Assembly: GCF_032191835.1 (NCBI RefSeq)
Contig: NC_083240.1
Location: forward strand, 13,454,001 to 13,518,000
Source of the DNA: Heteronotia binoei
Lineage: Eukaryota
Reading direction: 5' to 3'
DNA: 64,000 bases
Shown here: in pieces, positions 1-54,014 of the stretch
Position numbering within the stretch: the first letter of the stretch is position 1
Layout of the letters: the number at the start of each line of letters is the position of its first letter
Notes under the pieces: model-generated
What the model saw: the letters and a program-made list of their open reading frames with translations, nothing else
What the model was told of the DNA's origin: nothing
The model's database searches: none
Program-made: the position numbers and the translations under genes

Positions 1-939
1 CTAATTACAACCATGGCCGAAGCCCTCAACATTACTCTTCCGTCGGACTCACCTAAGGTCTCTGACCTTGTACACGACCTCGTGCAAACGGACTTTCCAC
101 CGGGCTCGCTTCTTCCCATGCTCCCGGTACACCTCGAAGGCCTCCGCGAAACCTGGGACAAACCTGCCTCGGTTCCACCTACCGCGAAACGCTTTGACTC
201 TCTCTACAGAGTTCACGCTCCTGAGGCTAAATTTCTTGCTTCTCATCCGGCGCCCAACTCCATTATCGTGCACTCAGCCACTAAGGCTAAACCATCCAGA
301 CATCCGACACCTCCTGACCGTGAAGGCAGGAAATTGGACACCCTGGCAAGAAAAATTTTCGGCCTTGCCTCTACAAATTCTAAACTAAACAATTATTTAG
401 CCTACTTTTCAGCCTATGTCTACAACTTGGCTATCCAATTTACGCCTCTTATTTCCGCCCTTCCTGAACCCTCCCAAAGAACGGCCTCCGGCTTGGTATC
501 AGAGCTATCTAGAGTGTCCAAGCAACAGATCAACACCATACGCCATGCTGTTTCTTGCTCGTCCAGGGTTTTTGCATCCTCTGTTGCCTTACGACGCCAC
601 GCCTGGCTGAGGTCCACAAATCTACAACCGGACATTAAACAAAAAATAGAAGACCTTCCCTTCGATGGCCTCGGCCTTTTCCATGCTTCTACTGACGAAG
701 TCTTAGCCTCGGTGGATGATGGCCGCAAACGTGCCAAGCGCTTGGGAGTTTCCCAACCGTTTTCCCAGCGTCCCAACCGTGCAAAGCCCTGGAGACCATC
801 ATTTCAAAGACGCCAAGGGTCACCTAAGCGTACCGACTTCTGGAAGAGGAAGACTGGCCAGCAGAAACCGCAGTTTCAACAAAGACCGCGGTCACAACAG
901 GCCAAAAAACCCTCCCTTCCTTCTAAACAGTCTCTTTGA
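1..939 (+). CDS. DIRS gag (ORF1), 3' part; LAP2alpha-like domain
   Basis: Frame open from base 1 (LITTMAEALN..., matching NLITTMASALN in copy 2) to TGA 937-939; RRHAWLRS..IEDLPFDG motif typical of vertebrate DIRS gag. Confidence 0.9.
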   Translation, partial: LITTMAEALNITLPSDSPKVSDLVHDLVQTDFPPGSLLPMLPVHLEGLRETWDKPASVPPTAKRFDSLYRVHAPEAKFLASHPAPNSIIVHSATKAKPSRHPTPPDREGRKLDTLARKIFGLASTNSKLNNYLAYFSAYVYNLAIQFTPLISALPEPSQRTASGLVSELSRVSKQQINTIRHAVSCSSRVFASSVALRRHAWLRSTNLQPDIKQKIEDLPFDGLGLFHASTDEVLASVDDGRKRAKRLGVSQPFSQRPNRAKPWRPSFQRRQGSPKRTDFWKRKTGQQKPQFQQRPRSQQAKKPSLPSKQSL

Positions 940-2815
940 CTCCCCCGTACCGTTCTTCAACACACGTCTGTCACCGTTCCTTCCGACTTGGAACTCGATA
1001 ACAACCGACTCCTGGGTGCTGACCATCGTGCGTCTAGGTTACGCAATCGAGTTCATTTCTCCACCTCGCCACCACTATTTCACAGCTACCCCCCCCTCTC
1101 CCCTCCTCCGTCAGGAGATCCTGGACTTGCTCCACAAGGAAGCCATAGAGCCCGTTCCCCCCCTCCATCGGGGGACAGGCTTCTATTCAAGATACTTCCT
1201 TGTTCCCAAGAGGGATGGAGGAAGGCGTCCCATTCTAGATCTAAGGAAGCTCAACAAGCACATCGCATACAGGAAGTTCAGAATGATCTCCCTGCAGTCC
1301 ATTCTGCCTCTTATCCCCAGGAATTCCTGGATGGCTTCCCTAGACCTTCAGGACGCTTACTTCCATGTGACAATCCGACCTCAACATCGGAAGTATCTAC
1401 GATTTGCCATGGGCCGGGACCACTACCAATATGTGTCCCTACCTTTCGGCCTCTCCACTGCGCCCCGCGTGTTCACCAAGTGCATGGCGGTTGTGGCAGC
1501 TGCACTTCGCACTCGGAACATTCCAGTCTTCCCGTACATCGACGACTGGCTCCTGGTGGCCCCGACACAACAGCAATTGGAGCACAACCTCGACACAGCT
1601 CTCACTCTTCTGAGCTCCCTGGGTCTCCGCGTGAATACATCAAAGTCGCACCTCACACCTACCCAGGACCTCAAGTTTATAGGCGCCCTTCTCTGCAGCT
1701 CCCTGCATCGAGCTTTTCTCCCAGAGGATCGGGCATGCACTATTATTGCCCTAGCCAAGGCAGTTCAACAGCAACCCCGTCAGTCTGCGTTCACAATCCA
1801 ACGCCTGCTGGGCCTTATGGCTGCAACGACATCTGTCCTTCGATTTGCCAGACTGCGAATGCGACAACTGCAGATCTGGTTTGTTCGAGCCTACAACCCT
1901 CAAACGCAACCGCAAGCTGCTCTGCTCACTATCCCACAGAGAGCGCTTCTATCTCTCACGTGGTGGACTGTGCCCAACAATCTACTAGAGGGCAAGCCGT
2001 TTCTACCGACTTCCCCTACGACCACTATAACAACAGATGCCTCCAAGTGGGGATGGGGAGCCCACCTAGAGGACAAAACTGTCAGAGGGCTTTGGACGAC
2101 CACCGAGAGACTCATGCACATAAACTGCTTAGAACTGATCGCGGTGCACAGAGCTCTTCAATCATTTCTCCCATTAATAAAGGGCCAGCATGTCCAGATC
2201 TCTACGGACAACATGGCGACTGTTTATTATATAAACAAGCAAGGGGGCACCAGATCCCTCCGTCTCTGTCGTATAGCCGTACTGCTCTGGGAATGGTGTG
2301 TCAAACACAACATATTTATGACTGCCATTCATCTCCCCGGTGTGGAGAATACCTTGGCCGATTCCCTCAGCAGGTTTCGGATAGACGACCACGAATGGTC
2401 CATCACTCCGACCTACCTTCGCAGCATCTTCCGCTGCTTCGGAACACCCGAGGTGGACGCCTTTGCATCCAGGAACAATGCCAAGTGTCCTCAGTTTTAT
2501 TGCAGGAGGGGCAACGACGCCTTTCTGCACGATTGGACAGGTCCCCTTCACTACTTCTTTCCACCGACCCCCCTTCTGACACGTGTGTTGGTGAAAATAA
2601 CTCGGGATGGCACAGACTGCATCCTCATTGCGCCATGGTGGCCTCGGCAACCGTGGTTCACGAGGCTGCTTCAACTGTCACGCCACACTTACTGCCGGCT
2701 TCCTCCTGCGGGCGACCTCCTCTCTCAAGCCAACGGTCAGGTTCTTCATCACAACCCTCGGGTCCTGGCCCTGACCGCCTGGAGAATACGGCCACCTTCC
2801 TCTCTACAGAAGTAG
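716..2815 (+). CDS. DIRS pol ORF: reverse transcriptase, RNase H, Dam-like methyltransferase domain
   Basis: LDLQDAYFH, LPFGLSTAPRVF, YIDD (RT); TDAS, LELIA, STDN, ADSLSR (RNase H); DAFAS..FFPP..APWWPRQPWF (MT). True start uncertain (ATG 716 or frameshift from gag). Confidence 0.93.
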   Translation: MMAANVPSAWEFPNRFPSVPTVQSPGDHHFKDAKGHLSVPTSGRGRLASRNRSFNKDRGHNRPKNPPFLLNSLFDSPVPFFNTRLSPFLPTWNSITTDSWVLTIVRLGYAIEFISPPRHHYFTATPPSPLLRQEILDLLHKEAIEPVPPLHRGTGFYSRYFLVPKRDGGRRPILDLRKLNKHIAYRKFRMISLQSILPLIPRNSWMASLDLQDAYFHVTIRPQHRKYLRFAMGRDHYQYVSLPFGLSTAPRVFTKCMAVVAAALRTRNIPVFPYIDDWLLVAPTQQQLEHNLDTALTLLSSLGLRVNTSKSHLTPTQDLKFIGALLCSSLHRAFLPEDRACTIIALAKAVQQQPRQSAFTIQRLLGLMAATTSVLRFARLRMRQLQIWFVRAYNPQTQPQAALLTIPQRALLSLTWWTVPNNLLEGKPFLPTSPTTTITTDASKWGWGAHLEDKTVRGLWTTTERLMHINCLELIAVHRALQSFLPLIKGQHVQISTDNMATVYYINKQGGTRSLRLCRIAVLLWEWCVKHNIFMTAIHLPGVENTLADSLSRFRIDDHEWSITPTYLRSIFRCFGTPEVDAFASRNNAKCPQFYCRRGNDAFLHDWTGPLHYFFPPTPLLTRVLVKITRDGTDCILIAPWWPRQPWFTRLLQLSRHTYCRLPPAGDLLSQANGQVLHHNPRVLALTAWRIRPPSSLQK

Positions 2816-3813
2816 CCAATGTCATCCTCAACGCAAGAAAGCCTTCCACCAGACTTTCTTATCAGCGTAAATGGAAGCGCTTCTGTTCCTTTGCAACATC
2901 TTCTCAGCTGCAGCCGGAAACGGCTCCACTTCCCCTAATTCTGGACTACCTACTTTCCCTACAGAAATCCGGACTCTGTTATTCCTCTGTGAAGGTTCAC
3001 CTTTCTGCGGTTTCTGCTTTCCACAAGCCGATCGATGGCAAGACTGTGTTCTCCCATCCCTTATCAAAGTCCTTTCTCAAGGGCTTGTTGCACCTCAACC
3101 CACCGGTTAAACCATTTGTTCCGACATGGAGTTTATCGTTAGTCCTTTCCTGCTTGATGAAAGCCCCTTTTGAGCCTATGGCTACCATAGACCTCAATCT
3201 CCTTTCCTGGAAGACAGCATTACTCGTAGCCCTCACCTCGGGCAAACGGGCAAGTGACTTATGCGCTTTCCGCTACGATCCTCCCTACACCATTTTCCAC
3301 AAGGACAAAGTTGTTTTGCGACCGGACCCTGCGTTCCTGCCTAAGGTTGTCTCCCAGTTCCACTTATCAACCTCAACTTCTCTACCAACGTTCTTCTCCA
3401 ACCCATCCGACCAGGGACAACGAGCCCTGCATTCCTTGGACGTTAGAAGGGCGTTATCCTTCTACCTTGATCGTACACAACCTTTCCGTAAGGACCCTAA
3501 TCTGTTTGTGGCCTACGGAAACCCCCACAGGGGTCTTAAGATTTCTACCCAACGTCTGTCAAAGTGGGTAGTCAGTGCCATCAGGTTGTGCTACGAACTG
3601 GCTAAACAGCCTTTGCCCGACGGCCTTAAGGGCCACTCTACTAGAGCGGTCTCCACGTCTTCGGCCTTTCTACAAGGCGTGTCTCTAGAGGACATTTGTG
3701 CGGCTGCATCCTGGTCCTCTCCATCCACGTTCGTCTCCCATTATGCGATGGACGTTCGTGCGAGACGTGACGCCTCCTTCGGCCAAGCGGTCCTCAGATC
3801 CATCTTCCTCTGA
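940..3813 (+). CDS. DIRS ORF3: long frame overlapping pol, ending in the tyrosine recombinase (YR domain about 2810-3813)
   Basis: No stop from the codon after the gag TGA to 3813; YR catalytic motifs SGKRASDL (R), GHSTR (HxxR), ASW, SHY (Y). Confidence 0.9.
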   Translation, partial: LPRTVLQHTSVTVPSDLELDNNRLLGADHRASRLRNRVHFSTSPPLFHSYPPLSPPPSGDPGLAPQGSHRARSPPPSGDRLLFKILPCSQEGWRKASHSRSKEAQQAHRIQEVQNDLPAVHSASYPQEFLDGFPRPSGRLLPCDNPTSTSEVSTICHGPGPLPICVPTFRPLHCAPRVHQVHGGCGSCTSHSEHSSLPVHRRLAPGGPDTTAIGAQPRHSSHSSELPGSPREYIKVAPHTYPGPQVYRRPSLQLPASSFSPRGSGMHYYCPSQGSSTATPSVCVHNPTPAGPYGCNDICPSICQTANATTADLVCSSLQPSNATASCSAHYPTESASISHVVDCAQQSTRGQAVSTDFPYDHYNNRCLQVGMGSPPRGQNCQRALDDHRETHAHKLLRTDRGAQSSSIISPINKGPACPDLYGQHGDCLLYKQARGHQIPPSLSYSRTALGMVCQTQHIYDCHSSPRCGEYLGRFPQQVSDRRPRMVHHSDLPSQHLPLLRNTRGGRLCIQEQCQVSSVLLQEGQRRLSARLDRSPSLLLSTDPPSDTCVGENNSGWHRLHPHCAMVASATVVHEAASTVTPHLLPASSCGRPPLSSQRSGSSSQPSGPGPDRLENTATFLSTEVANVILNARKPSTRLSYQRKWKRFCSFATSSQLQPETAPLPLILDYLLSLQKSGLCYSSVKVHLSAVSAFHKPIDGKTVFSHPLSKSFLKGLLHLNPPVKPFVPTWSLSLVLSCLMKAPFEPMATIDLNLLSWKTALLVALTSGKRASDLCAFRYDPPYTIFHKDKVVLRPDPAFLPKVVSQFHLSTSTSLPTFFSNPSDQGQRALHSLDVRRALSFYLDRTQPFRKDPNLFVAYGNPHRGLKISTQRLSKWVVSAIRLCYELAKQPLPDGLKGHSTRAVSTSSAFLQGVSLEDICAAASWSSPSTFVSHYAMDVRARRDASFGQAVLRSIFL

Positions 3814-3930: not shown

Positions 3931-3963
3931 CACCCTCCTCCAGTCCATCCAGCTGGCTAGTCA

Positions 3964-4059
3964 CCCATGTGTGGGACTGCACAGAGACCACGAAGAAGAT
4001 AAACAGGTTGCTTACCTGTAACTGATGATCTTCGAGTGGTCATCTGTGCAGTCACACAC
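3964..4059 (+). repeat. DIRS internal complementary region (ICR), copy 1
   Basis: Reverse complement of right end joined to left end; identical to ICR of copy 2. Confidence 0.93.
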
Positions 4060-4127
4060 GCCCACCCAGCCTTCCCCGCTGCTGGCCTCTTGTGATTCTT
4101 CCGTAAACTTATAGTGTCATTGCCGGC

Positions 4128-4347
4128 GGCGGCTGGAAGAAACTGAGTGGAAGGGGCGCTCTCCCCCCGCTCCAGGCATGCGCGGTCGCTGCCTGCTCCC
4201 CAGAGCGGGAGGAAAGCGCGCCAAAAGACGTTATAAACGAGCTATTGGAGCTCCGAGGAATGGATCCGTTGCCTGCGGCAAGACCCATGTGTGTGACTGC
4301 ACAGATGACCACTCGAAGATCATCAGTTACAGGTAAGCAACCTGTTT
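4128..4347 (+). repeat. DIRS right inverted terminal repeat, copy 1
   Basis: Near-identical to 53763-53983; last ~59 nt complementary to ICR 4001-4059. Confidence 0.93.
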
Positions 4348-5132
4348 TTTCCTGACTTGCATTCCTTTATCTCTCTCTCTCTCTCCCCCCACCCCCCGCC
4401 TGCCCGATTTTACTTAGGGCTGCATTCCACTTCTCCTTCTAGGAGAAGGTCTCACATCAGCTCTGGAACTGAAACATGCACAGCTTCTCACAGCATTCAC
4501 TCCCTTCCATTTGTACCTCTGCCACATTACCCATTGTGTGCATCAGTAAAAGCGCTCCGTGCCAAATTCTGAAATATAGAACAAAACAATGGGCAATTTG
4601 TAATGAATTCATTCCAGAACCACTAATTTGGAAACTCCAAAAACCAGGGAGATATTAGGATGAAGAGGAATTTTAGAACTGTTCCAGCAGTATCCACAGA
4701 GAGAAGATGTAGGCTTAGATGGTCTATAGGCAAGCACTGACTGAAAGCCACTGTAGAACCTTCTTGCTTTTCAAGATGGCGTCATGCCAGAATCTGAGTT
4801 CTTTGGGCTTTAACTGGTTTCTTGGTTCTGATGGGCTAGAAAGCTTTATGAGATTCATTCAAATAGCCCCTGCTTTTCTAGAAACAGTATTCAAAGAGAG
4901 AAGAGCCTGCATCAGGCACTCCCCCTCCAGTGACTGATGAAGAGTTGTGGCTCAGTGGTGGAGCACATGCAGAATGTCCCAAGTTCGCTCTTGACTTTTG
5001 CAGCTAAGGAATTTAACTACTGAGAAAGAGTTTTCTCTACCTGAGAAAACAAGGCTGAGATGGACAGTACAACATCAGACAGTGTAATATGCAGCTCCCT
5101 TTGTGTGGCGAAGGCCCATGACTTAGTGCTAA

Positions 5133-46457: not shown

Positions 46458-47677
46458 TCACTGTGAATAAAAAAAATTGAGATAGCTTTAGCTGGAAATG
46501 AGAGGCAAGAATCAGACTTCCAACCATTGAGGAAAAGGTGGTCGAGCCCCCCCCCCTCCCCATTTTTACAATATTCCATCAGCAAAGCCTCAAATAATAG
46601 ATCTGGGATTGACTTAACTGTGGGTTTTTAATAGTCCGAGCAAGGGTTGGCGTGGTGCTTGCCAGAATGTCGGATGCTAAGCAAGGGCTGACTTCATAGA
46701 AGACAGCTTCATGGGCTCAGTTGGCAGGGTTTTGCACGCAGAAGGTTCCAGCTTTGATCCTTGCTAAACCGAGTAAGACCCCCTGCCTTAGATCTTGGAG
46801 AGGTGATGCAGTTCAGAATAATCCGTGCTGGTCCAGACGAACTCGTGGCTAGAAGCAGGTGGACGGTGGCAGGAAGGTGAGCTCCGTGTCTTCTCCTTCC
46901 AGTCCCAGAGGCAGTATGCCTCTTTAGATCAGTTGCCAGGGAACACAGGCAAGAAGATGCTGTCTCAGGTCACCTGCTCACGGGCTTCCTAGAAGCAGCT
47001 GGTCAGCCACTGTGTGAACAGAAGGCTGGATTTGATGGGCCTTGGGTCTGATCCAACAGGCTTTTCTTACACTCTTATGGAGGACTTTTTTTTTGTAGCA
47101 GGAACTCCTTTGCCTATTAGGCCACACCTCCCTGGTGTAGCCAATCCTCCAAGAGCTTACAGGGCTCTTAGTACAGGGGTGTAAGCTCCAGGAGGACTGG
47201 CTTCATCAGGGGTGTGTGGCTGTTGTGTATGCGGACTCATGGTTATGTTCCTTTACCAGCATTCCTGCCTGGCTCATTGGAGCCTTGAGGACTGAGCTTG
47301 GGGACTCTAGAACAATGGGCTGTAGGATCCAAAGCCCTACTGCCCTGGTCCAATCAGAAGCCCTCTGCTGGTTCAAACGATCCAATGCTGTTCTAGCATG
47401 GACTGTATATAGTTGGCCCCGTTGGCCCAGTTAGGCAGTCTTCTTTAGCTACTAGTTACCATGCTGTAACTCCAGTAAAGAGCTATGATCACTGCAGCCG
47501 CGTCTCCTCTGTGCATTGAACCCACTACATTATAGTGACCTAATATACAAAGGAGTTCCTGCTACAAAAAAAAAGCCCTGCTGTTATGCTTCGTTGCCCT
47601 TTTTCAGTGCCTGGATTGGGGTGCTTCCTGTAGCTGGGGGGGGGGGGGGAGGGGGATGCCATCCCAGCCACCTCTTG

Positions 47678-47875
47678 ATCTTCTTCGTGGTCTCTGTGCA
47701 GTCCCACACATGGGGTCTTGCCGCAGGCAACGGATCCGTACCTCGGAGCTCCAATAGCTCGTTTATAACGTCTTTTGGCGCGCTTTCCTCCCGCCCTGGG
47801 GAGCAGGCAGCGACTGCGCATGCCTGGAGCGGGGGGAGAGCGCCTATTCCACTCAGTTTCTTCCCTTCCGCCGCC
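47678..47875 (+). repeat. DIRS left ITR
   Basis: About 47707-47864 is the exact reverse complement of about 53770-53927; first ~37 nt complementary to ICR 53598-53634. Confidence 0.95.
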
Positions 47876-48097: not shown

Positions 48098-50614
48098 ATG
48101 GAAGGGAAAATCACCTTTAAAAGGTGCAGGCAGTGTGGTTCTAAAATTCCGTCCTCGGACGGTCATTCACTCTGCCTTTTTTGCTTGGGGGAATCCCACA
48201 GAACCGATAACTGCCACCACTGTGCTTGCTTCGGCAAGCAGGCGCGCAAGAACAGAGCAGCCCGCCTTCGTAGTTTCCTCATGGAATCCTCTCTACGCGC
48301 AGTGTCTACTTCAGATCCGCCGCCTCCCCCACTGAGAGCGGGAGATTCGGCAACTTCGGCCCTTCCTACCGTACCTAGGAAGCATAAGTCCGATAAAAAG
48401 GCTTCTAAGCACTCTGAGGGTCACAAGGCGCCCAAACAGACTCGTCATGGCGAATCCAGCCTGTCGAAGCCACACCACTCGGGCCCGAAAACCTCCAGCC
48501 CGACCACTTCGGCGCCTAAGAAGCATCACGACCCGTCGGCTTCTACCTCCGTGCATACTTCCGCCTTTGCTACGGCTGCGCAATCGTCCGCATCGACCGC
48601 CCAAACGGCCTCCGCGCAATCGAATCCGATTCTACCTATTGAACTCTCGGCTCCTTCCGATGTTATCTCGGAAATGCCTCGCCTCACTCAACCCTCTATC
48701 GAAGTGATTCCGATTGGCTCGAGATCGCCCTCGGTTCACAGCCTTCCTCCTGATGATATCCTCGACACCGAGGCTCCACTTCTCGGACCCGAATCCTTCC
48801 TCGACGTCACAACGCCAGTGCAGAAGGACATTACGACTCCATTGCTTAAAGACACGGCAGCACCACTGCTAAAGGAGTCCTCGACACAAGTTTCCTCTCA
48901 TCGGCTCCGACCTGGATCCCCACGGGCCCGCTCTCGCTTGCGGTCTCCGCTTCGTCCGAGATCTCCGTTCAGAGATCGTCCCTACTCTCCGCATCGATCT
49001 CCGCGTCGTCACGACTACCAGGACCCTCGCCGTGATCGCTCCCGGTCCCGGTATGGTGACTACCTCCGTGACTACCCACGAGACCGTTCTCCTTCTCGGT
49101 CTCCATCACCTCGACTTCACTCGCGCTACCATCGGTACCTGCGTTCACCATCGCACCACAGCTATAGGCATCTCTCCGACTTCGATCCCGAGCCTCTCCC
49201 CAGAGATGTTTATATGCCTCGACTCAGGGATTATTATTCACCCGGAACCCGCGACTACTACCGTTCACGCGACCAACGATCTCCTTATTACCGCCACCTG
49301 TCACCAGATTGCTACGATGATTACCAACACTACTACTCTCCCCGAGAAGAACCAAACCCTCGCACCCGAGATGATGCGGCAGCCCTTCGGACCCGAGACG
49401 TCTTCGACTCCCAGACTGCACCTGTGCAGCCTCCCGTGATTCCTCGAAACCGAGATTCTTCCAGAACAGCATCCGCATCGGTTTCCAAGCCACCGGCTTC
49501 GCCACTCAAGCGTCCCCGGGACCCTTCACCTGTTGAACCCAAGTCTCCACAACGTCCCCTCTCGGCTTCGGATAGAGACACTTCTGATCATTCCGACTCC
49601 GAGGAGGCCCCTGCCTCACCCTCATCCGACCAGCCTCCTAGGCTTTCACCATCCGACAGTTCTAAGGCCTACCTGAATCTCATTACAACCATGGCTTCCG
49701 CACTAAACATCCCTATGTCCTCCGACTCACCAAAAGTTTCGGACGTGGTCCACGACCTAGTCCGCGCAGATTTTCCAGATAGCTCCACGCTTCCTATGCT
49801 CCCTGTACACCTTGAAGGCCTCCAGGAAGCCTGGGAGAAGCCGGCTTCGATCCCTACACTTTCTCGCCGCCTGGATTCTCTTTATAGGGTGCACGTAGCT
49901 GACTGCAAATTCCTCGCATCTCACCCGGCACCCAACTCTGTCGTGGTTCATTCCGCCACCAAGACCAAACAATCTCGCCACCCCGTTCCTCCGGACCGGG
50001 AGGGTCGAAAATTGGACACTCTGGCTAAGAAAATCTACAGTTTTTCTTCAACCAACTCCAAGTTGAACAATTATTTAGCCTACTTTGCGGCTTACTCCTT
50101 CAACTTGGCTAACCAGATTACCCCTCATATTGCATCCATGCCTGACTCATCTCAGAAGACTGTGTCGTCTCTCGTCTCTGAGCTCTCCCGTGTCAATAAA
50201 CAACAAATCAACTCTATCCGCCATGCGGTCTCCTGTTCTTCTCGAATTTTTGCAACTTCGGTGGCTTTACGTCGCCACGCCTGGCTGCGCTCTACCAACT
50301 TGCAGCCGGACATCAAACAGCGTATAGAAGACCTTCCCTTCGACGGTCTGGGACTCTTCCATGCGTCCACGGACGAGGTCCTTGCATCCGTCGATGACGG
50401 CCGCAAAAGAGCCAAACGACTTGGTGTCACACAACCAACCTCACTGCCCTCTAATAGGCAGAGACCGTGGAAGCCATCCTTCCAACGCCGCCAGCGGTCT
50501 CCCAAGTCTCAAGATTTCTGGAAAAGGAAACCTCTCCCAAAGCAACCTTTTCATCAGAGGCCACGGGCCCAACCTTCTAAGAAACAATCTCAGACAGGCA
50601 AGCAGTCTCTTTGA
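48098..50614 (+). CDS. DIRS gag (838 aa): N-terminal Cys/His zinc finger, RS/RP-rich low-complexity middle, LAP2alpha-like C-terminus
   Basis: ATG 48098; Cx2Cx9Hx2Cx2Cx4Hx4Cx2C; aligns with copy 1 gag. Confidence 0.9.
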   Translation: MEGKITFKRCRQCGSKIPSSDGHSLCLFCLGESHRTDNCHHCACFGKQARKNRAARLRSFLMESSLRAVSTSDPPPPPLRAGDSATSALPTVPRKHKSDKKASKHSEGHKAPKQTRHGESSLSKPHHSGPKTSSPTTSAPKKHHDPSASTSVHTSAFATAAQSSASTAQTASAQSNPILPIELSAPSDVISEMPRLTQPSIEVIPIGSRSPSVHSLPPDDILDTEAPLLGPESFLDVTTPVQKDITTPLLKDTAAPLLKESSTQVSSHRLRPGSPRARSRLRSPLRPRSPFRDRPYSPHRSPRRHDYQDPRRDRSRSRYGDYLRDYPRDRSPSRSPSPRLHSRYHRYLRSPSHHSYRHLSDFDPEPLPRDVYMPRLRDYYSPGTRDYYRSRDQRSPYYRHLSPDCYDDYQHYYSPREEPNPRTRDDAAALRTRDVFDSQTAPVQPPVIPRNRDSSRTASASVSKPPASPLKRPRDPSPVEPKSPQRPLSASDRDTSDHSDSEEAPASPSSDQPPRLSPSDSSKAYLNLITTMASALNIPMSSDSPKVSDVVHDLVRADFPDSSTLPMLPVHLEGLQEAWEKPASIPTLSRRLDSLYRVHVADCKFLASHPAPNSVVVHSATKTKQSRHPVPPDREGRKLDTLAKKIYSFSSTNSKLNNYLAYFAAYSFNLANQITPHIASMPDSSQKTVSSLVSELSRVNKQQINSIRHAVSCSSRIFATSVALRRHAWLRSTNLQPDIKQRIEDLPFDGLGLFHASTDEVLASVDDGRKRAKRLGVTQPTSLPSNRQRPWKPSFQRRQRSPKSQDFWKRKPLPKQPFHQRPRAQPSKKQSQTGKQSL

Positions 50615-52484
50615 CTCCCCCATCAGGCATACCAGACTATCCCCTTTTTACCCGAGTTGGAGTTCCATCACCACCGACTCTTGGGTCCTCACCATCGTGC
50701 GTCTAGGTTACGCAATAGAGTTCGTTTCGCCACCACACCACCACCACTTCATAGCCACACCTCCATCTGCTCTCTTGCAGCAGGAAATTCTGGACTTGCT
50801 CCAGAAGAATGCCATAGAACCCGTTCCTCCTCAACATCGAGGCACGGGATTCTACTCAAGATACTTCCTGGTCCCCAAACGCGATGGAGGAAAGCGCCCT
50901 ATCCTAGATCTTCGGAAGCTGAACAATTTCATCGAATGCAGGAAGTTCAGAATGATCTCCCTACACACCATCCTGCCTCTTATTCCCAGGAACTCCTGGA
51001 TGGCTTCCCTAGATCTTCAGGACGCTTACTTCCACGTGACTATCCGACCTCATCATCGGAAGTATTTAAGATTCGCTATGGGGCAAGACCACTTCCAGTA
51101 CGTATCCCTGCCCTTTGGCCTCTCCACCGCACCAAGGGTATTCACCAAGTGTATGGCGGTGGTGGCAGCGGCTCTCAGACTCCGAGACATCACAGTCTTC
51201 CCATATATAGACGACTGGCTTCTCATAGCACCGACTCAGCATCGTTTGCAGACCAATATCAGCACAACGCTCTCCCTCCTCGATTCCCTGGGCCTTCGTG
51301 TGAACACATCCAAATCCCATCTCGAGCCCACGCAGGACATCAAGTTTATAGGAGCTCTCCTTCGCACCTCTCTTCACCGTGCTTTCCTTCCAGAGGATCG
51401 AGCAATCACCATCATCACCTTAGCCAGGTCAATTCAACGACAGCCCTGCCAGTCTGCATTCACAATACAACGCCTGCTGGGCCTCATGGCCGCCACGACT
51501 TCTGTCATCCACTTTGCCAAGCTACGGATGCGACATCTACAGCTCTGGTTTGTGAGAGCCTACCATCCTCTGTTGCAACCGCAGAGCACCCTACTCACGG
51601 TTCCCCAGAGAGCTCTCTCATCCCTTACCTGGTGGACGGTACCCAGCAATCTTCTCGCGGGCATGCCGTTCCTACCGATGCCTCCAGTAGCTGTTGTGAC
51701 AACAGATGCCTCAAAGTGGGGATGGGGAGCCCACTTACAGGACAAGACCGTCAGAGGCCTTTGGACGCCCTCCGAGAGGGCCATGCACATAAACTGCTTA
51801 GAACTGATTGCCGTACACAGGGCCCTCTTATCCTTTCTTCCCCTGATCAACGGGAGCCATGTCCAGATCTCAACGGACAACATGGCAACTGTCTATTACA
51901 TCAACAAGCAAGGGGGAACCAAGTCTCTCAGACTTTGCCGTATAGCCATCGTGCTCTGGGAATGGTGTCTGGAGCACAACATCCATTTGACCGCCGTTCA
52001 CCTCCCAGGCGTAGACAATGTTCTGGCCGACTCTCTGAGCAGGTTTCGTCTGGACGACCACGAGTGGTCCCTCAATCCAACCTACCTCCGACGCATTTTC
52101 AGATGCTTCGGAACACCCATGGTGGATGCCTTTGCTTCACGGGACAATGCCAAATGCCCACGCTATTTCTCCAGAAGGGAGAACGACGCCTTCCTACACA
52201 GATGGACGGGCCCCCTCCACTACATCTTCCCACCAACCCCCCTACTGACTCGGGTTCTGACGAAGATCACACGAGACGGCACGGACTGCATCCTGGTAGC
52301 CCCCTGGTGGCCACGGCAACCATGGTTTACGAGACTTCTCCAGTTATCTCATCACACCTACCGTCGCCTTCCTCTCGTGAGCGACCTCTTGTCCCAAGCC
52401 AATGGTCAGATATTGCACCACAATCCTCAAGTACTGGCCCTAACGGCCTGGAGAATTCGACCTCCCACCTCTCCGCAGAGGTAG
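50394..52484 (+). CDS. DIRS pol ORF: RT, RNase H, MT
   Basis: Same intact motifs as copy 1; ATG 50394 is homologous to ATG 716 (frame also open from 50361); true start uncertain. Confidence 0.92.
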   Translation: MTAAKEPNDLVSHNQPHCPLIGRDRGSHPSNAASGLPSLKISGKGNLSQSNLFIRGHGPNLLRNNLRQASSLFDSPIRHTRLSPFYPSWSSITTDSWVLTIVRLGYAIEFVSPPHHHHFIATPPSALLQQEILDLLQKNAIEPVPPQHRGTGFYSRYFLVPKRDGGKRPILDLRKLNNFIECRKFRMISLHTILPLIPRNSWMASLDLQDAYFHVTIRPHHRKYLRFAMGQDHFQYVSLPFGLSTAPRVFTKCMAVVAAALRLRDITVFPYIDDWLLIAPTQHRLQTNISTTLSLLDSLGLRVNTSKSHLEPTQDIKFIGALLRTSLHRAFLPEDRAITIITLARSIQRQPCQSAFTIQRLLGLMAATTSVIHFAKLRMRHLQLWFVRAYHPLLQPQSTLLTVPQRALSSLTWWTVPSNLLAGMPFLPMPPVAVVTTDASKWGWGAHLQDKTVRGLWTPSERAMHINCLELIAVHRALLSFLPLINGSHVQISTDNMATVYYINKQGGTKSLRLCRIAIVLWEWCLEHNIHLTAVHLPGVDNVLADSLSRFRLDDHEWSLNPTYLRRIFRCFGTPMVDAFASRDNAKCPRYFSRRENDAFLHRWTGPLHYIFPPTPLLTRVLTKITRDGTDCILVAPWWPRQPWFTRLLQLSHHTYRRLPLVSDLLSQANGQILHHNPQVLALTAWRIRPPTSPQR

Positions 52485-53482
52485 CCCACGTTATTCTAAA
52501 CGCTAGGAAGCCCTCCACAAGGCTTTCGTACCAAAGGAAATGGAAACGCTTCTGTTCATTCGCGACTGCTAACCATCTACTCCCAGAATCAGTACCTCTC
52601 AATATGATCCTGGAGTATTTACTTTCCCTACAGAAATCAGGACTCTGTTACTCATCCTTGAAAGTTCATCTCTCTGCCATCTCTGCGTTCCACAACCCGG
52701 TAGACGGCAAAACAGTTTTTTCTCATTCCTTGTCCAAGTCTTTTCTCAAGGGCATGTTGCACCTCAATCCACCCGTTAAACCCCTTGTCCCAACTTGGAG
52801 TTTATCCCTAGTTCTTTCCTCGCTTATGAAAGCACCATTTGAACCTATGGCTACCATAGACCTCAGTCTCCTCTCCTGGAAGACAGCATTGCTGATTGCC
52901 CTTACCTCTGGAAAACGGGCAAGTGACTTATGCGCCTTCCGCCACGACCCTCCCTACACCATTTTTCACAAGGAAAAGGTTGTCCTCAGACCGGACCCTG
53001 CGTTCCTTCCTAAGGTTGTCTCCCAGTTCCACTTATCGACTGCGACCTCTCTGCCGACCTTTTTTCCAAACCCAACAGATCACGGACAACGGGCCCTGCA
53101 TTCGCTGGATGCAAGAAGGGCTTTATCCTTCTACCTTGATCGTACACGGCCTTTCCGTAAGGACCCTAATCTATTTGTGGCATACGGAAACCCCTGCAGG
53201 GGACTCAAAATCTCTACCCAGAGACTATCTAAATGGGTAGTTAGCGCCATTAGGCTGTGCTACGAACTGGCTAAGCAGCCTCTGCCCGAAGGCCTTAAGG
53301 CTCACTCTACCAGAGCGGTCTCGACGTCTTCGGCTTTTTTGCACGGCGTCTCCCTAGAGGACATCTGTGCTGCTGCATCGTGGTCCTCTCCCTCCACGTT
53401 CGTCTCCCATTATGCGTTGGACGTTCGTGCAAGACGTGACGCCTCCTTCGGCCAAGCGGTCCTCAGATCCATCTTTCACTGA
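50615..53482 (+). CDS. DIRS ORF3 / tyrosine recombinase
   Basis: Open from the codon after the gag TGA; R, AHSTR, W, Y catalytic residues intact. Confidence 0.9.
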   Translation, partial: LPHQAYQTIPFLPELEFHHHRLLGPHHRASRLRNRVRFATTPPPLHSHTSICSLAAGNSGLAPEECHRTRSSSTSRHGILLKILPGPQTRWRKAPYPRSSEAEQFHRMQEVQNDLPTHHPASYSQELLDGFPRSSGRLLPRDYPTSSSEVFKIRYGARPLPVRIPALWPLHRTKGIHQVYGGGGSGSQTPRHHSLPIYRRLASHSTDSASFADQYQHNALPPRFPGPSCEHIQIPSRAHAGHQVYRSSPSHLSSPCFPSRGSSNHHHHLSQVNSTTALPVCIHNTTPAGPHGRHDFCHPLCQATDATSTALVCESLPSSVATAEHPTHGSPESSLIPYLVDGTQQSSRGHAVPTDASSSCCDNRCLKVGMGSPLTGQDRQRPLDALREGHAHKLLRTDCRTQGPLILSSPDQREPCPDLNGQHGNCLLHQQARGNQVSQTLPYSHRALGMVSGAQHPFDRRSPPRRRQCSGRLSEQVSSGRPRVVPQSNLPPTHFQMLRNTHGGCLCFTGQCQMPTLFLQKGERRLPTQMDGPPPLHLPTNPPTDSGSDEDHTRRHGLHPGSPLVATATMVYETSPVISSHLPSPSSRERPLVPSQWSDIAPQSSSTGPNGLENSTSHLSAEVAHVILNARKPSTRLSYQRKWKRFCSFATANHLLPESVPLNMILEYLLSLQKSGLCYSSLKVHLSAISAFHNPVDGKTVFSHSLSKSFLKGMLHLNPPVKPLVPTWSLSLVLSSLMKAPFEPMATIDLSLLSWKTALLIALTSGKRASDLCAFRHDPPYTIFHKEKVVLRPDPAFLPKVVSQFHLSTATSLPTFFPNPTDHGQRALHSLDARRALSFYLDRTRPFRKDPNLFVAYGNPCRGLKISTQRLSKWVVSAIRLCYELAKQPLPEGLKAHSTRAVSTSSAFLHGVSLEDICAAASWSSPSTFVSHYALDVRARRDASFGQAVLRSIFH

Positions 53483-53564: not shown

Positions 53565-53597
53565 CACCCTCCTCCAGGACACTTAGCTGGCTAGTCA

Positions 53598-53693
53598 CCC
53601 ATGTGTGGGACTGCACAGAGACCACGAAGAAGATAAACAGGTTGCTTACCTGTAACTGATGATCTTCGAGTGGTCATCTGTGCAGTCACACAC
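53598..53693 (+). repeat. DIRS ICR, copy 2
   Basis: Complementary to both element ends; junction at 53634/53635. Confidence 0.95.
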
Positions 53694-53762
53694 GCCCACC
53701 CAGCCTTCCCCGCTGCTGGCTTTTGGTACTTCTTGTCTTACCTTTTTAGTCTCTCTGCCAGT

Positions 53763-53983
53763 GGCGGCTGGAAGAAACTGAGTGGAATAGGCGCTCTCCC
53801 CCCGCTCCAGGCATGCGCAGTCGCTGCCTGCTCCCCAGGGCGGGAGGAAAGCGCGCCAAAAGACGTTATAAACGAGCTATTGGAGCTCCGAGGTACGGAT
53901 CCGTTGCCTGCGGCAAGACCCCATGTGTGTGACTGCACAGATGACCACTCGAAGATCATCAGTTACAGGTAAGCAACCTGTTT
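53763..53983 (+). repeat. DIRS right ITR with terminal extension
   Basis: Inverted match to left ITR. Confidence 0.95.
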
Positions 53984-54014
53984 TTCTCTCTCCTTTCCTT
54001 GACTCCCCCTACAT

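What the first reader, a model, noticed from the sequence alone, without database searches (positions are those of the whole stretch)
50601..50625. CTT-TGA-C at the DIRS gag stop: candidate +1 frameshift site producing Gag-Pol (both copies)
Seen: both diverged copies end gag with the identical string CAG TCT CTT TGA CTC CCC C (TGA at 937-939 and 50612-50614). Shifting +1 from CTT reads TTT GAC TCC CCC (F-D-S-P), which is the pol frame. Pol-frame peptides agree between the copies only from S-L-F-D-S-P onward. The ~70 pol-frame codons upstream are unalignable (VPSAWEFPNRFPSV... versus EPNDLVSHNQPHCP...). Established: CUU-UGA-C is the +1 shift site of bacterial prfB, Ty1 shifts +1 at CUU-AGG-C, and vertebrate antizyme shifts +1 at a UGA (UCC-UGA). 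Inference: RT/RNaseH/MT is made as a Gag-Pol fusion by P-site re-pairing CUU to UUU at a slow UGA. I know of no described recoding mechanism for vertebrate DIRS.
Basis: partly seen in the sequence, partly recalled or inferred. Interest (0 to 1): 0.9.

Follow-up and report, generated by a model that had tools for sequence, protein, structure and literature searches.

The report
DIRS gag-stop +1 frameshift site
Two lizard-type DIRS retrotransposons end their gag gene on the slippery string CTT-TGA-C, and comparison with about 50 related families suggests ribosomes slip one base forward there to make the reverse transcriptase, a trick not previously described for these elements.

Summary
Both DIRS1-like copies end gag with CAG TCT CTT TGA CTC CCC C (TGA at 937-939 and 50612-50614). 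This 19-nt block is identical between the copies, while its flanks are about 65% identical.

RT/RNaseH/MT lies in the +1 frame. Its conservation starts at the stop.

Relatives support a programmed +1 frameshift:
- Ten reptile and unnamed-source (run or metagenome assembly) families checked as DNA all have NTT-TGA (CTT, TTT, GTT, ATT) with pol at +1.
- Gag ends in V/F/L/I in 39 of 54 families, against 5% in the preceding tail.
- That last codon is NTT in 14 of 16 cases, against 28% inside the same ORFs.
- The upstream pol-frame ATG is absent in most relatives.
- In 39 +1 families the stop is TGA in 36.
- More distant families use TCC or CCC, which with UUU/GUU/AUU match the antizyme shift-site repertoire. 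Others use CAA or AAA.

So the real motif is N_UUU_GA_N, not CTT-TGA-C. No 3' RNA structure was found, and there are no protein data.

The recombinase ORF lies in the gag frame and is open from the same TGA, so read-through remains possible. This layout is not universal.

I found no description of DIRS recoding in the searchable literature. Other first readers of this scan flagged the same motif elsewhere in this genome.

The parts
47666..47864 (+). left inverted terminal repeat of copy 2
   Evidence: Inverted repeats I1 and I3 pair 47666-47864 with 53598-53646 and 53770-53941. I1 is 172 nt and 99% complementary.
48098..50614 (+). gag ORF of copy 2 (838 aa plus TGA)
   Evidence: It starts at the first ATG after the left ITR. 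Its C-terminal half is homologous to DIRS gag / LAP2alpha-like proteins. It is under purifying selection in this frame up to the stop.
50603..50621 (+). 19-nt block identical between the two diverged copies, spanning the gag stop (copy 2)
50609..50615 (+). candidate +1 shift site CTT-TGA-C (copy 2): P-site CUU, A-site UGA
   Evidence: NTT-TGA with +1 pol in 10 of 10 reptile and unnamed-source (run or metagenome assembly) families checked as DNA.
50610..52484 (+). pol (RT/RNaseH/MT) in the +1 frame, from the shift site to its TAG (copy 2)
   Evidence: Pfam RVT_1 2e-22, RT_RNaseH, Dam-like. Conserved from FDS onward.
50615..53482 (+). zero-frame ORF open from the gag TGA: about 625 codons overprinted on pol, then the tyrosine recombinase (roughly 52490-53479)
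   Evidence: There is only one stop in about 6 kb of this frame. Zero stops are seen against about 19 expected under synonymous-codon permutation. SAM-like integrase Pfam hit. The overprinted part is only 48% identical as protein between the copies.
53598..53987 (+). internal complementary region and right ITR of copy 2
   Evidence: 88-97% identity to copy 1
1..939 (+). gag of copy 1 (5' part cut off by the window start), ending in TGA at 937-939
934..940 (+). candidate +1 shift site CTT-TGA-C (copy 1), inside the identical block 928-946
935..2815 (+). pol (RT/RNaseH/MT) of copy 1 in the +1 frame
940..3813 (+). zero-frame ORF of copy 1, open from the gag TGA and ending in the recombinase

Best explanation
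The two elements are DIRS1-like tyrosine-recombinase retrotransposons. Their gag-pol junction is most likely a programmed +1 ribosomal frameshift site of the 'shifty stop' type. A ribosome finishing gag holds peptidyl-tRNA-Leu on CUU in the P site and the poorly terminated UGA (followed by C) in the A site. A fraction of ribosomes let the tRNA re-pair one base forward on UUU. They then read GAC and continue into RT/RNaseH/MT, giving a Gag-Pol fusion with the junction ...K-Q-S-L-D-S-P.... The rest terminate and give Gag. Shown here: the layout, the lack of a conserved pol start codon, and codon-level conservation of N_UUU_GA across families. Inferred: the slip itself, its efficiency, and the fusion protein.
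For: (1) Pol is in the +1 frame and its protein conservation begins at the stop. Upstream, the gag frame alone is constrained. (2) The 19-nt block is identical while its flanks are about 65% identical. (3) Ten families checked as DNA all have NTT-TGA with +1 pol: CTT x5 (two window copies, L001, L002, L091 from Anolis sagrei), TTT x2 (turtles L003, L005), GTT x2 (L004, L092), ATT x1 (L006). Gag identity to the window is only 25-38%. (4) Among 54 gag proteins from a profile search, the last residue is V/F/L/I in 39, against 5.4% in the preceding 30 residues. The terminal V/F/L/I codon is NTT in 14 of 16 cases, against 28% inside the same ORFs, binomial p about 1e-6. (5) L001, L002, L005, L006, L091 and L092 have no pol-frame ATG upstream of the stop, and L002 has none for 300 nt after it. 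In the window the first downstream pol-frame Met lies inside the RT domain. (6) In 39 +1 families, including about 30 from metagenome contigs, the gag stop is TGA in 36 and +4 is C in 24. The stop typically lies 40-55 nt before the conserved RLxPF...W..IT.D.WVL motif. (7) The P-site codons found (UUU, GUU, AUU, UCC, CCC) match those known to support +1 shifting at UGA in antizyme mRNAs, where UGA is used in about 97% of cases (PMC1874602). CUU-UGA-C is the prfB site (established knowledge).
Against: There is no protein, ribosome-profiling or reporter evidence. No excess RNA structure was found 3' of the stop in eight loci (z between -0.6 and +1.3), and no stimulator was identified beyond a basic K-Q/R-x tail. 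Many distant +1 families have P-site codons that cannot re-pair (CAA, CAG, AAA, AAG, AGA, CGT, TAC, CAC). In those families re-pairing cannot be the mechanism. The families compared are related, so the p-values overstate independence. Sister DIRS lineages use other junction types, so the strategy is evolutionarily labile.
Confidence: 0.65

Rival explanations
1. There is a +1 frameshift at the UGA, but without P-site re-pairing. As proposed for mammalian antizyme (UCC-UGA) and Ty3, the stalled ribosome skips or occludes the U of UGA and accepts Asp-tRNA on GAC. The NUU codon only tunes efficiency.
For: Distant DIRS families keep +1 pol and a UGA stop after codons that cannot re-pair, such as CAA, AAA, CAG, AGA, CGT, TAC and UCC. 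Four families have the antizyme site UCC-UGA.
Against: In the clade to which the window copies belong, NUU is kept at codon level (14 of 16, against 28% expected). It changes only among CUU, UUU, GUU and AUU. That pattern is what re-pairing on UUU predicts.
Confidence: 0.15
2. Pol is made as a separate protein by termination-coupled reinitiation, or by non-AUG initiation, close to the gag stop.
For: Sister DIRS lineages in the metagenome contigs have pol at +2 with stop-start overlaps UAAUG or UGAUG (L064 family, L042 family, L090). So reinitiation is plausibly used elsewhere in the group.
Against: No AUG or conserved near-cognate start lies near the stop in the +1 families. The only conserved letters are TTTGA. 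Reinitiation gives no reason for an NUU codon before the stop.
Confidence: 0.08
3. Pol starts at the upstream pol-frame ATG (716 / 50394) by leaky scanning, or from a spliced or subgenomic mRNA.
For: Both window copies have that ATG, and the pol frame is open for 76-94 codons upstream of the stop.
Against: The ATG arises from GAT-GAY Asp-Asp codons of gag. It is absent in L001, L002, L005, L006, L091, L092 and many metagenome families. In some families the pol frame is open for only 21-23 codons upstream. The upstream pol-frame peptide is not conserved, and gag synonymous sites there are saturated. Two contigs from an RNA library cross the junction without a joint, which is weak evidence.
Confidence: 0.04
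4. The hydrophobic last residue and the conserved block serve Gag itself (a C-terminal peptide motif) or an RNA or DNA signal unrelated to translation.
For: Gag tails share K at -4 (35 of 54) and Q/R at -3 and -2. This could be a peptide motif.
Against: A peptide motif would not fix the synonymous third base as T or the Leu codon as CUU. It would not explain the near-exclusive use of UGA or the constant +1 offset of pol.
Confidence: 0.03

Closest known systems
Antizyme (OAZ) mRNA +1 frameshifting at UCC-UGA and its variants
   Same: Eukaryotic +1 shift with a UGA stop in the A site. ORF2 has no start codon of its own. UGA is used almost exclusively. The known P-site codons UUU, GUU, AUU, UCC and CCC (PMC1874602) all recur at DIRS gag stops.
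   Different: Antizyme is a cellular autoregulatory gene with polyamine sensing, 5' modules and often a 3' pseudoknot. Here the setting is a retroelement gag-pol junction, CUU is the commonest codon in the window's subclade, no 3' structure was found, and polyamine dependence is unknown.
Bacterial prfB (RF2) CUU-UGA-C
   Same: The heptamer is identical, and the same CUU-to-UUU re-pairing opposite a slowly read UGA is proposed (established knowledge).
   Different: prfB is bacterial, depends on an upstream Shine-Dalgarno-like contact with 16S rRNA, and is fed back on by RF2. None of that applies in a vertebrate.
Ty1/Ty2/Ty4 gag-pol (TYA-TYB) +1 frameshift at CUU-AGG-C
   Same: Retrotransposon Gag-Pol made by a +1 slip of tRNA-Leu off CUU. 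The minimal 7-nt site needs no RNA structure (established knowledge).
   Different: The slow A-site codon is a rare sense codon (AGG), not a stop. These are LTR/copia elements of yeast, and the slip relies on a yeast-specific tRNA-Leu(UAG).
Euplotes AAA-UAA/UAG shifty stops
   Same: +1 shifting at a stop codon after a codon ending in a run that allows partial re-pairing (PMC4759687, listed). Some distant DIRS families have AAA-UGA.
   Different: This is a genome-wide feature tied to altered termination in one ciliate genus, not an element-specific signal.
Gammaretrovirus-type gag stop read-through and type II UGA-CUA/CGG read-through
   Same: A single leaky UGA followed by C separates gag from a long in-frame ORF, here the recombinase ORF.
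   Different: Pol is not the in-frame ORF in this element. No pseudoknot was found. The in-frame layout is missing in intact Anolis sagrei families that keep the shift site.

Membership tests
Programmed +1 ribosomal frameshift at a shifty stop | The downstream ORF is in the +1 frame and abuts or overlaps the ORF1 stop | tested here: met
   Frames established. The same offset holds in 10 reptile and unnamed-source (run or metagenome assembly) families and about 30 metagenome families.
Programmed +1 ribosomal frameshift at a shifty stop | The downstream ORF lacks a conserved initiation codon of its own | tested here: met
   No pol-frame ATG in L001, L002, L005, L006, L091, L092 or many metagenome loci. 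The window's ATG at 716/50394 is not conserved.
Programmed +1 ribosomal frameshift at a shifty stop | The P-site codon allows re-pairing in the +1 frame or belongs to the known shift-prone set | tested here: met
   CUU to UUU in the window. NUU in 10 of 10 families checked as DNA. V/F/L/I is the last residue in 39 of 54 families. NTT is the terminal codon in 14 of 16 cases, against 28% expected.
Programmed +1 ribosomal frameshift at a shifty stop | A slowly decoded A-site codon is conserved | tested here: met
   TGA in 36 of 39 +1 families; +4 is C in 24 of 39.
Programmed +1 ribosomal frameshift at a shifty stop | Nucleotide conservation at the site exceeds what the coding sequence needs | tested here: met
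   A 19-nt identical block lies in flanks about 65% identical, where gag synonymous sites are saturated. L032, with pol about 41% identical, has AAACAGTCT-TTT-TGAC.
Programmed +1 ribosomal frameshift at a shifty stop | A cis stimulator is present (3' structure or 5' element) | tested here: inconclusive
   There is no excess folding 3' of the stop and no covarying structure in a GC-rich subclade. A conserved basic tail (K at -4) might act at the 5' side. Pseudoknots were not tested.
Programmed +1 ribosomal frameshift at a shifty stop | A trans-frame Gag-Pol protein is produced | not testable with these tools
   This needs a reporter, mass spectrometry or ribosome profiling.
DIRS1-like retrotransposon | gag, RT/RNaseH/methyltransferase pol and tyrosine recombinase ORFs, with inverted terminal repeats and an internal complementary region | tested here: met
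   Pfam hits. ITR and ICR pairs. The long pol/YR ORF overlap matches what is described for AcDIRS2 and others (PMC3266345).
Termination-reinitiation (stop-start overlap) | A start codon overlaps or lies within a few bases of the upstream stop, in the downstream frame | tested here: not met
   There is no ATG or conserved near-cognate start at the window's junction. Other DIRS lineages do have it (UAAUG, UGAUG).
-1 programmed frameshift | An X_XXY_YYZ heptamer with the downstream ORF at -1 | tested here: not met
   Pol is at +1 and there is no such heptamer. By contrast, L078 has A_AAA_AAC and the L044 family has A_AAA_AAG with pol at -1.
Stop-codon read-through | A long ORF continues in frame after a leaky stop | tested here: met
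   The zero frame is open for about 955 codons after the TGA and ends in the recombinase. Whether it is actually read through cannot be tested here.

The most novel reading that the evidence does not exclude
The single gag UGA is a three-way switch. Termination gives Gag, a +1 slip gives Gag-Pol, and read-through gives a Gag-spacer-recombinase fusion. On this reading, the long and so far unexplained overlap of the recombinase ORF with pol exists only to carry zero-frame ribosomes about 625 codons to the recombinase domain. For: in both window copies and in at least 24 diverged families the zero frame is open from the gag stop to the recombinase. Zero stops are seen where 13-38 are expected. 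The overprinted part is not conserved as protein (48% identity, against 82% for pol). The stop context is UGA-CUN. Against: intact Anolis sagrei families keep the shift site but have the zero frame closed for 732 nt after the stop. Families with pol at +2 also keep the recombinase frame stop-free over pol, although there it is not the gag frame.
Probability: 0.3. Interest if true: 0.85.

Novelty: new member of a known kind. Interest (0 to 1): 0.72.

Why it matters
How DIRS elements translate three overlapping ORFs from one RNA has never been worked out. The DIRS papers I read describe the ORFs and their overlaps but give no recoding mechanism. A 2016 review of frameshifting does not mention DIRS in the part of its text that is held. 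If the inference holds, these elements supply a large natural set of animal +1 frameshift sites at stop codons: dozens of diverged families carrying CUU, UUU, GUU, AUU, UCC or CCC before UGA. At present antizyme is essentially the only well-studied case in vertebrates. Such a set would allow comparative study of which features make a stop codon shift-prone. It would also allow gag-pol to be annotated correctly as one fusion, and would predict that the Gag:Pol ratio responds to termination efficiency. The same data show that DIRS lineages have swapped between +1, -1, stop-start and in-frame junctions, as retroviruses have.

Tried and rejected
- Searches with the gag profile for related loci in metagenome and viral contigs found nothing. 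The pol profile in viral contigs also found nothing.
- P0048 was not on record, and no DNA could be fetched for the Pleurodeles locus.
- No DNA sequencing run of this genome was served. Only contigs from three RNA libraries of one study were available. Two of these contigs cross the junction without a joint, but they show neither strand nor expression level.
- I looked for a 3' stimulatory RNA structure. Folding energies did not differ from shuffled sequences in eight loci. There was no covarying consensus structure in seven GC-rich relatives.
- A -2 slip (CUU back to CUC) is possible in the two window copies. It is not possible in L001, L002, L091 or the Phe/Val/Ile families, so I rejected it as the conserved mechanism.
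- The overlapping AATGA in CAA-TGA families puts the ATG in the wrong frame.
- I tested whether the overprinted zero-frame region is conserved as a protein. It is not clearly so.


Full report
WHAT IS THERE

The window holds two DIRS1-like retrotransposons.

Copy 2 is bounded by inverted terminal repeats at 47666-47864 and 53770-53987. The 172-nt arms are 99% complementary. An internal complementary region lies at about 53598-53693. Its gag starts at the first ATG after the left repeat (48098) and ends at TGA 50612-50614.

Copy 1 is cut by the window start. Its gag ends at TGA 937-939.

The two copies belong to different families. Nucleotide identity is 63-85% in coding parts, and gag synonymous sites are saturated.

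In both copies RT, RNase H and a Dam-like methyltransferase lie in the +1 frame relative to gag (ORFs 716..2815 and 50361..52484; Pfam hits).

The tyrosine recombinase lies in the gag frame. That frame has a single stop, the gag TGA, over about 6 kb.

CHECK OF THE OBSERVATION

The string CAGTCTCTTTGACTCCCCC is identical in the two copies (928-946 and 50603-50621). It sits between stretches that are about 65% identical and contain indels.

Pol-frame peptides of the two copies agree only from SLFDSP onward.

The last 77 gag codons behave as ordinary gag-frame coding sequence (pS 0.84, pN 0.21). This shows no second constraint from the pol frame upstream of the stop.

The bare heptamer CTTTGAC occurs nine times in the window, as chance predicts. 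Only its position at the gag stop and its conservation count.

RELATIVES WITH HOMOLOGOUS GAG

A word-based search found few relatives. A profile search found 1876 proteins.

I checked ten families at DNA level. All have NTT-TGA with pol at +1:
- CTT in both window copies, in L001 and L002 (sources not named), and in L091 (Anolis sagrei)
- TTT in two turtle loci (L003, L005)
- GTT in L004 (A. sagrei) and L092 (Carettochelys)
- ATT in L006

Gag identity to the window is only 25-38%.

Among 54 gag proteins whose match reaches the C-terminus, the last residue is F (14), V (13), L (10) or I (2). That is 39 of 54, against 5.4% for these residues in the preceding 30 positions. No other tail position exceeds 5 of 54.

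At codon level, the terminal V/F/L/I codon is NTT in 14 of 16 families. Inside the same ORFs the figure is 28%, giving binomial p of about 1e-6. The families are related, so this p-value is generous.

The conserved feature is therefore N_UUU_GA: a UUU available in the +1 frame opposite a UGA.

The +4 base is C in the window's subclade but A or T in turtles.

The pol alignment starts with FD[ST]. A linker of variable length follows (0-34 extra residues) before the conserved RLxPF...W..IT.D.WVL block. FD therefore looks like a nucleotide constraint rather than a pol protein motif.

START CODONS

It is absent in L001, L002, L005, L006, L091 and L092.

In L005 and L006 the pol frame is open for only 21-23 codons upstream of the stop. 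L002 has no pol-frame ATG for 300 nt after the stop.

In the window the first pol-frame Met after the stop lies inside the RT domain. Independent AUG initiation of a complete pol is therefore unlikely.

WIDER DIRS DIVERSITY

A pol profile pulled 80 DIRS-like loci from metagenome contigs, with 34-46% pol identity. I analysed their junctions with scripts.

About 30 distinct families have pol at +1. In these the gag stop usually lies 40-55 nt before the conserved pol motif.

Across 39 +1 families, including the reptile and unnamed-source ones, the stop is TGA in 36 and +4 is C in 24.

The codon before the stop is NTT in some families (L017 GTT, L032 and L033 TTT, L085 ATT). Elsewhere it is TCC (four families, one of them TCC-TGA-T), CCC, CAA, CAG, AAA, AAG, AGA, CGT, TAC or CAC. 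L007 also has CAA-TGA-A with +1 pol.

[quoted passage not shown] It notes that UGA is used in about 97% of cases (PMC1874602). The overlap with the DIRS set is striking.

The many CAA and AAA sites suggest that a stop-dependent +1 shift can work without good re-pairing. If so, NUU acts as an enhancer that became fixed in the clade containing the window's elements.

Other lineages use other junctions:
- Pol at +2 with stop-start overlaps UAAUG or UGAUG (L064 family, L042 family, L090).
- Pol at -1 after the classical heptamers A_AAA_AAC (L078) or A_AAA_AAG (L044 family).
- Pol in frame after UGA (L010, L037, L049).

So DIRS elements appear to have explored the same range of gag-pol strategies as retroviruses and LTR elements.

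STIMULATORS

The 120 nt after the stop fold no better than shuffled sequences in eight loci. Seven GC-rich relatives share no covarying structure.

On the 5' side, gag tails share K at -4 (35 of 54) and Q/R at -3 and -2. L032, whose pol is only about 41% identical, has AAACAGTCT-TTT-TGAC against AAACAGTCT-CTT-TGAC in copy 1. This may be a 5' element or a nascent-peptide effect. It is untested.

THE RECOMBINASE FRAME

In both window copies, and in at least 24 diverged +1 families, the gag frame stays open from the gag stop for about 960-1140 codons and ends in the recombinase.

Permuting synonymous pol codons gives 13-38 stops in that frame. None are observed, and no permutation out of 500-2000 reached zero.

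The overprinted part is 48% identical as protein between the copies, against 82% for pol and 90% for the recombinase. It looks like a stop-free spacer.

This long overlap is known (PMC3266345). I found no statement that it is in frame with gag behind a single UGA. It makes read-through of the same UGA a live possibility.

Two facts limit that idea:
- Intact A. sagrei families (L004, L091) keep GTT/CTT-TGA-C and +1 pol, but the zero frame is closed for the first 732 nt after the stop.
- Families with pol at +2 also keep the recombinase frame stop-free over pol, although in them it is the gag +1 frame.

The frameshift site therefore stands on its own. The read-through reading remains open.

EXPRESSION DATA

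No DNA run of this genome was served. Contigs from three RNA libraries of one study include relatives of the element. Two contigs cross 50357-50842 and 50357-50622 without a joint. This is compatible with an unspliced gag-pol RNA but proves little.

LITERATURE

Full-text searches found nothing on a recoding mechanism in DIRS. I also read the DIRS overview, the fungal DIRS paper, the Dictyostelium DIRS-1 mobilisation paper, the Xenopus DIRS paper and a large 2016 recoding review, of which the first 300,000 of 449,034 characters are held and searchable. They gave nothing either. Subscription papers by Goodwin and Poulter could not be read.

Other first readers of this scan noted the same CTT-TGA-C motif, a CAA-TGA variant and the three-way idea in other pieces of this genome. 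Those notes are unchecked and were not used as evidence.

VERDICT

My confidence is about 0.65 for the slip-type mechanism and about 0.8 for a +1 shift of some kind. It is a new member of a known kind of recoding, in an element class where none had been described.

Noticed in passing
window 50615-53482 and 940-3813: The recombinase ORF is in the gag frame and open from the gag TGA. About 625 of its codons are overprinted on pol. Zero stops are seen where about 19-22 are expected, and the overprinted part is poorly conserved as protein.
   Followed up: yes
L064 family, L042 family, L090 (metagenome contigs): These DIRS-like families have pol at +2 and a pol ATG that overlaps the gag stop as TAATG or TGATG. 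This layout suggests termination-reinitiation.
   Followed up: partly
L078:1979-1996; L044, L050, L055 at their gag stops: The classical -1 slippery heptamers A_AAA_AAC and A_AAA_AAG lie directly before the gag stop. In these DIRS-like families pol is at -1 and has no ATG.
   Followed up: partly
L010:2195-2215; L037; L049: Pol-like sequence continues in frame after a gag TGA (GCT-TGA-CTT, GAC-TGA-A, AAA-TGA-CTA). This is either a read-through layout or, for the single contig L010, an indel.
   Followed up: no
L004 and L091 (Anolis sagrei): In both families the recombinase-frame ORF opens exactly 732 nt after the gag stop. It still overlaps pol by about 430 codons but cannot be reached by read-through of the gag stop.
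   Followed up: partly
L064, L076, L078 and other families with pol at +2: The recombinase frame is stop-free across all of pol. It runs 65-227 nt upstream of the gag stop in the gag +1 frame. How ribosomes enter it is unexplained.
   Followed up: partly
window 48098-48250: Gag of copy 2 begins with a Cys/His-rich stretch (CRQC...H.LC.FC...H...C..C) that looks like a zinc finger. A roughly 450-residue Ser/Pro/Arg-rich low-complexity region follows, making gag 838 aa long.
   Followed up: no
proteins P0004, P0007, P0040, P0086, P0026: Public gene models fuse DIRS gag fragments to host genes or name them after host proteins (a GPCR, Sec61 alpha, OTUD6B, SRRM1-like, proteoglycan 4-like). These look like annotation artefacts. 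Several gag homologs carry a weak LAP2alpha C-terminal Pfam hit.
   Followed up: no
window 47081-47125 and 47535-47579: A 45-nt inverted repeat pair (91% complementary, 409 nt apart) lies just upstream of copy 2. It may be a small foldback or MITE-like insert.
   Followed up: no
window 3951-4086 / 53585-53720 and 4284-4348 / 53920-53984: The terminal and internal complementary regions are far better conserved between the two families (blocks of 136 and 65 identical bases) than any coding part.
   Followed up: no
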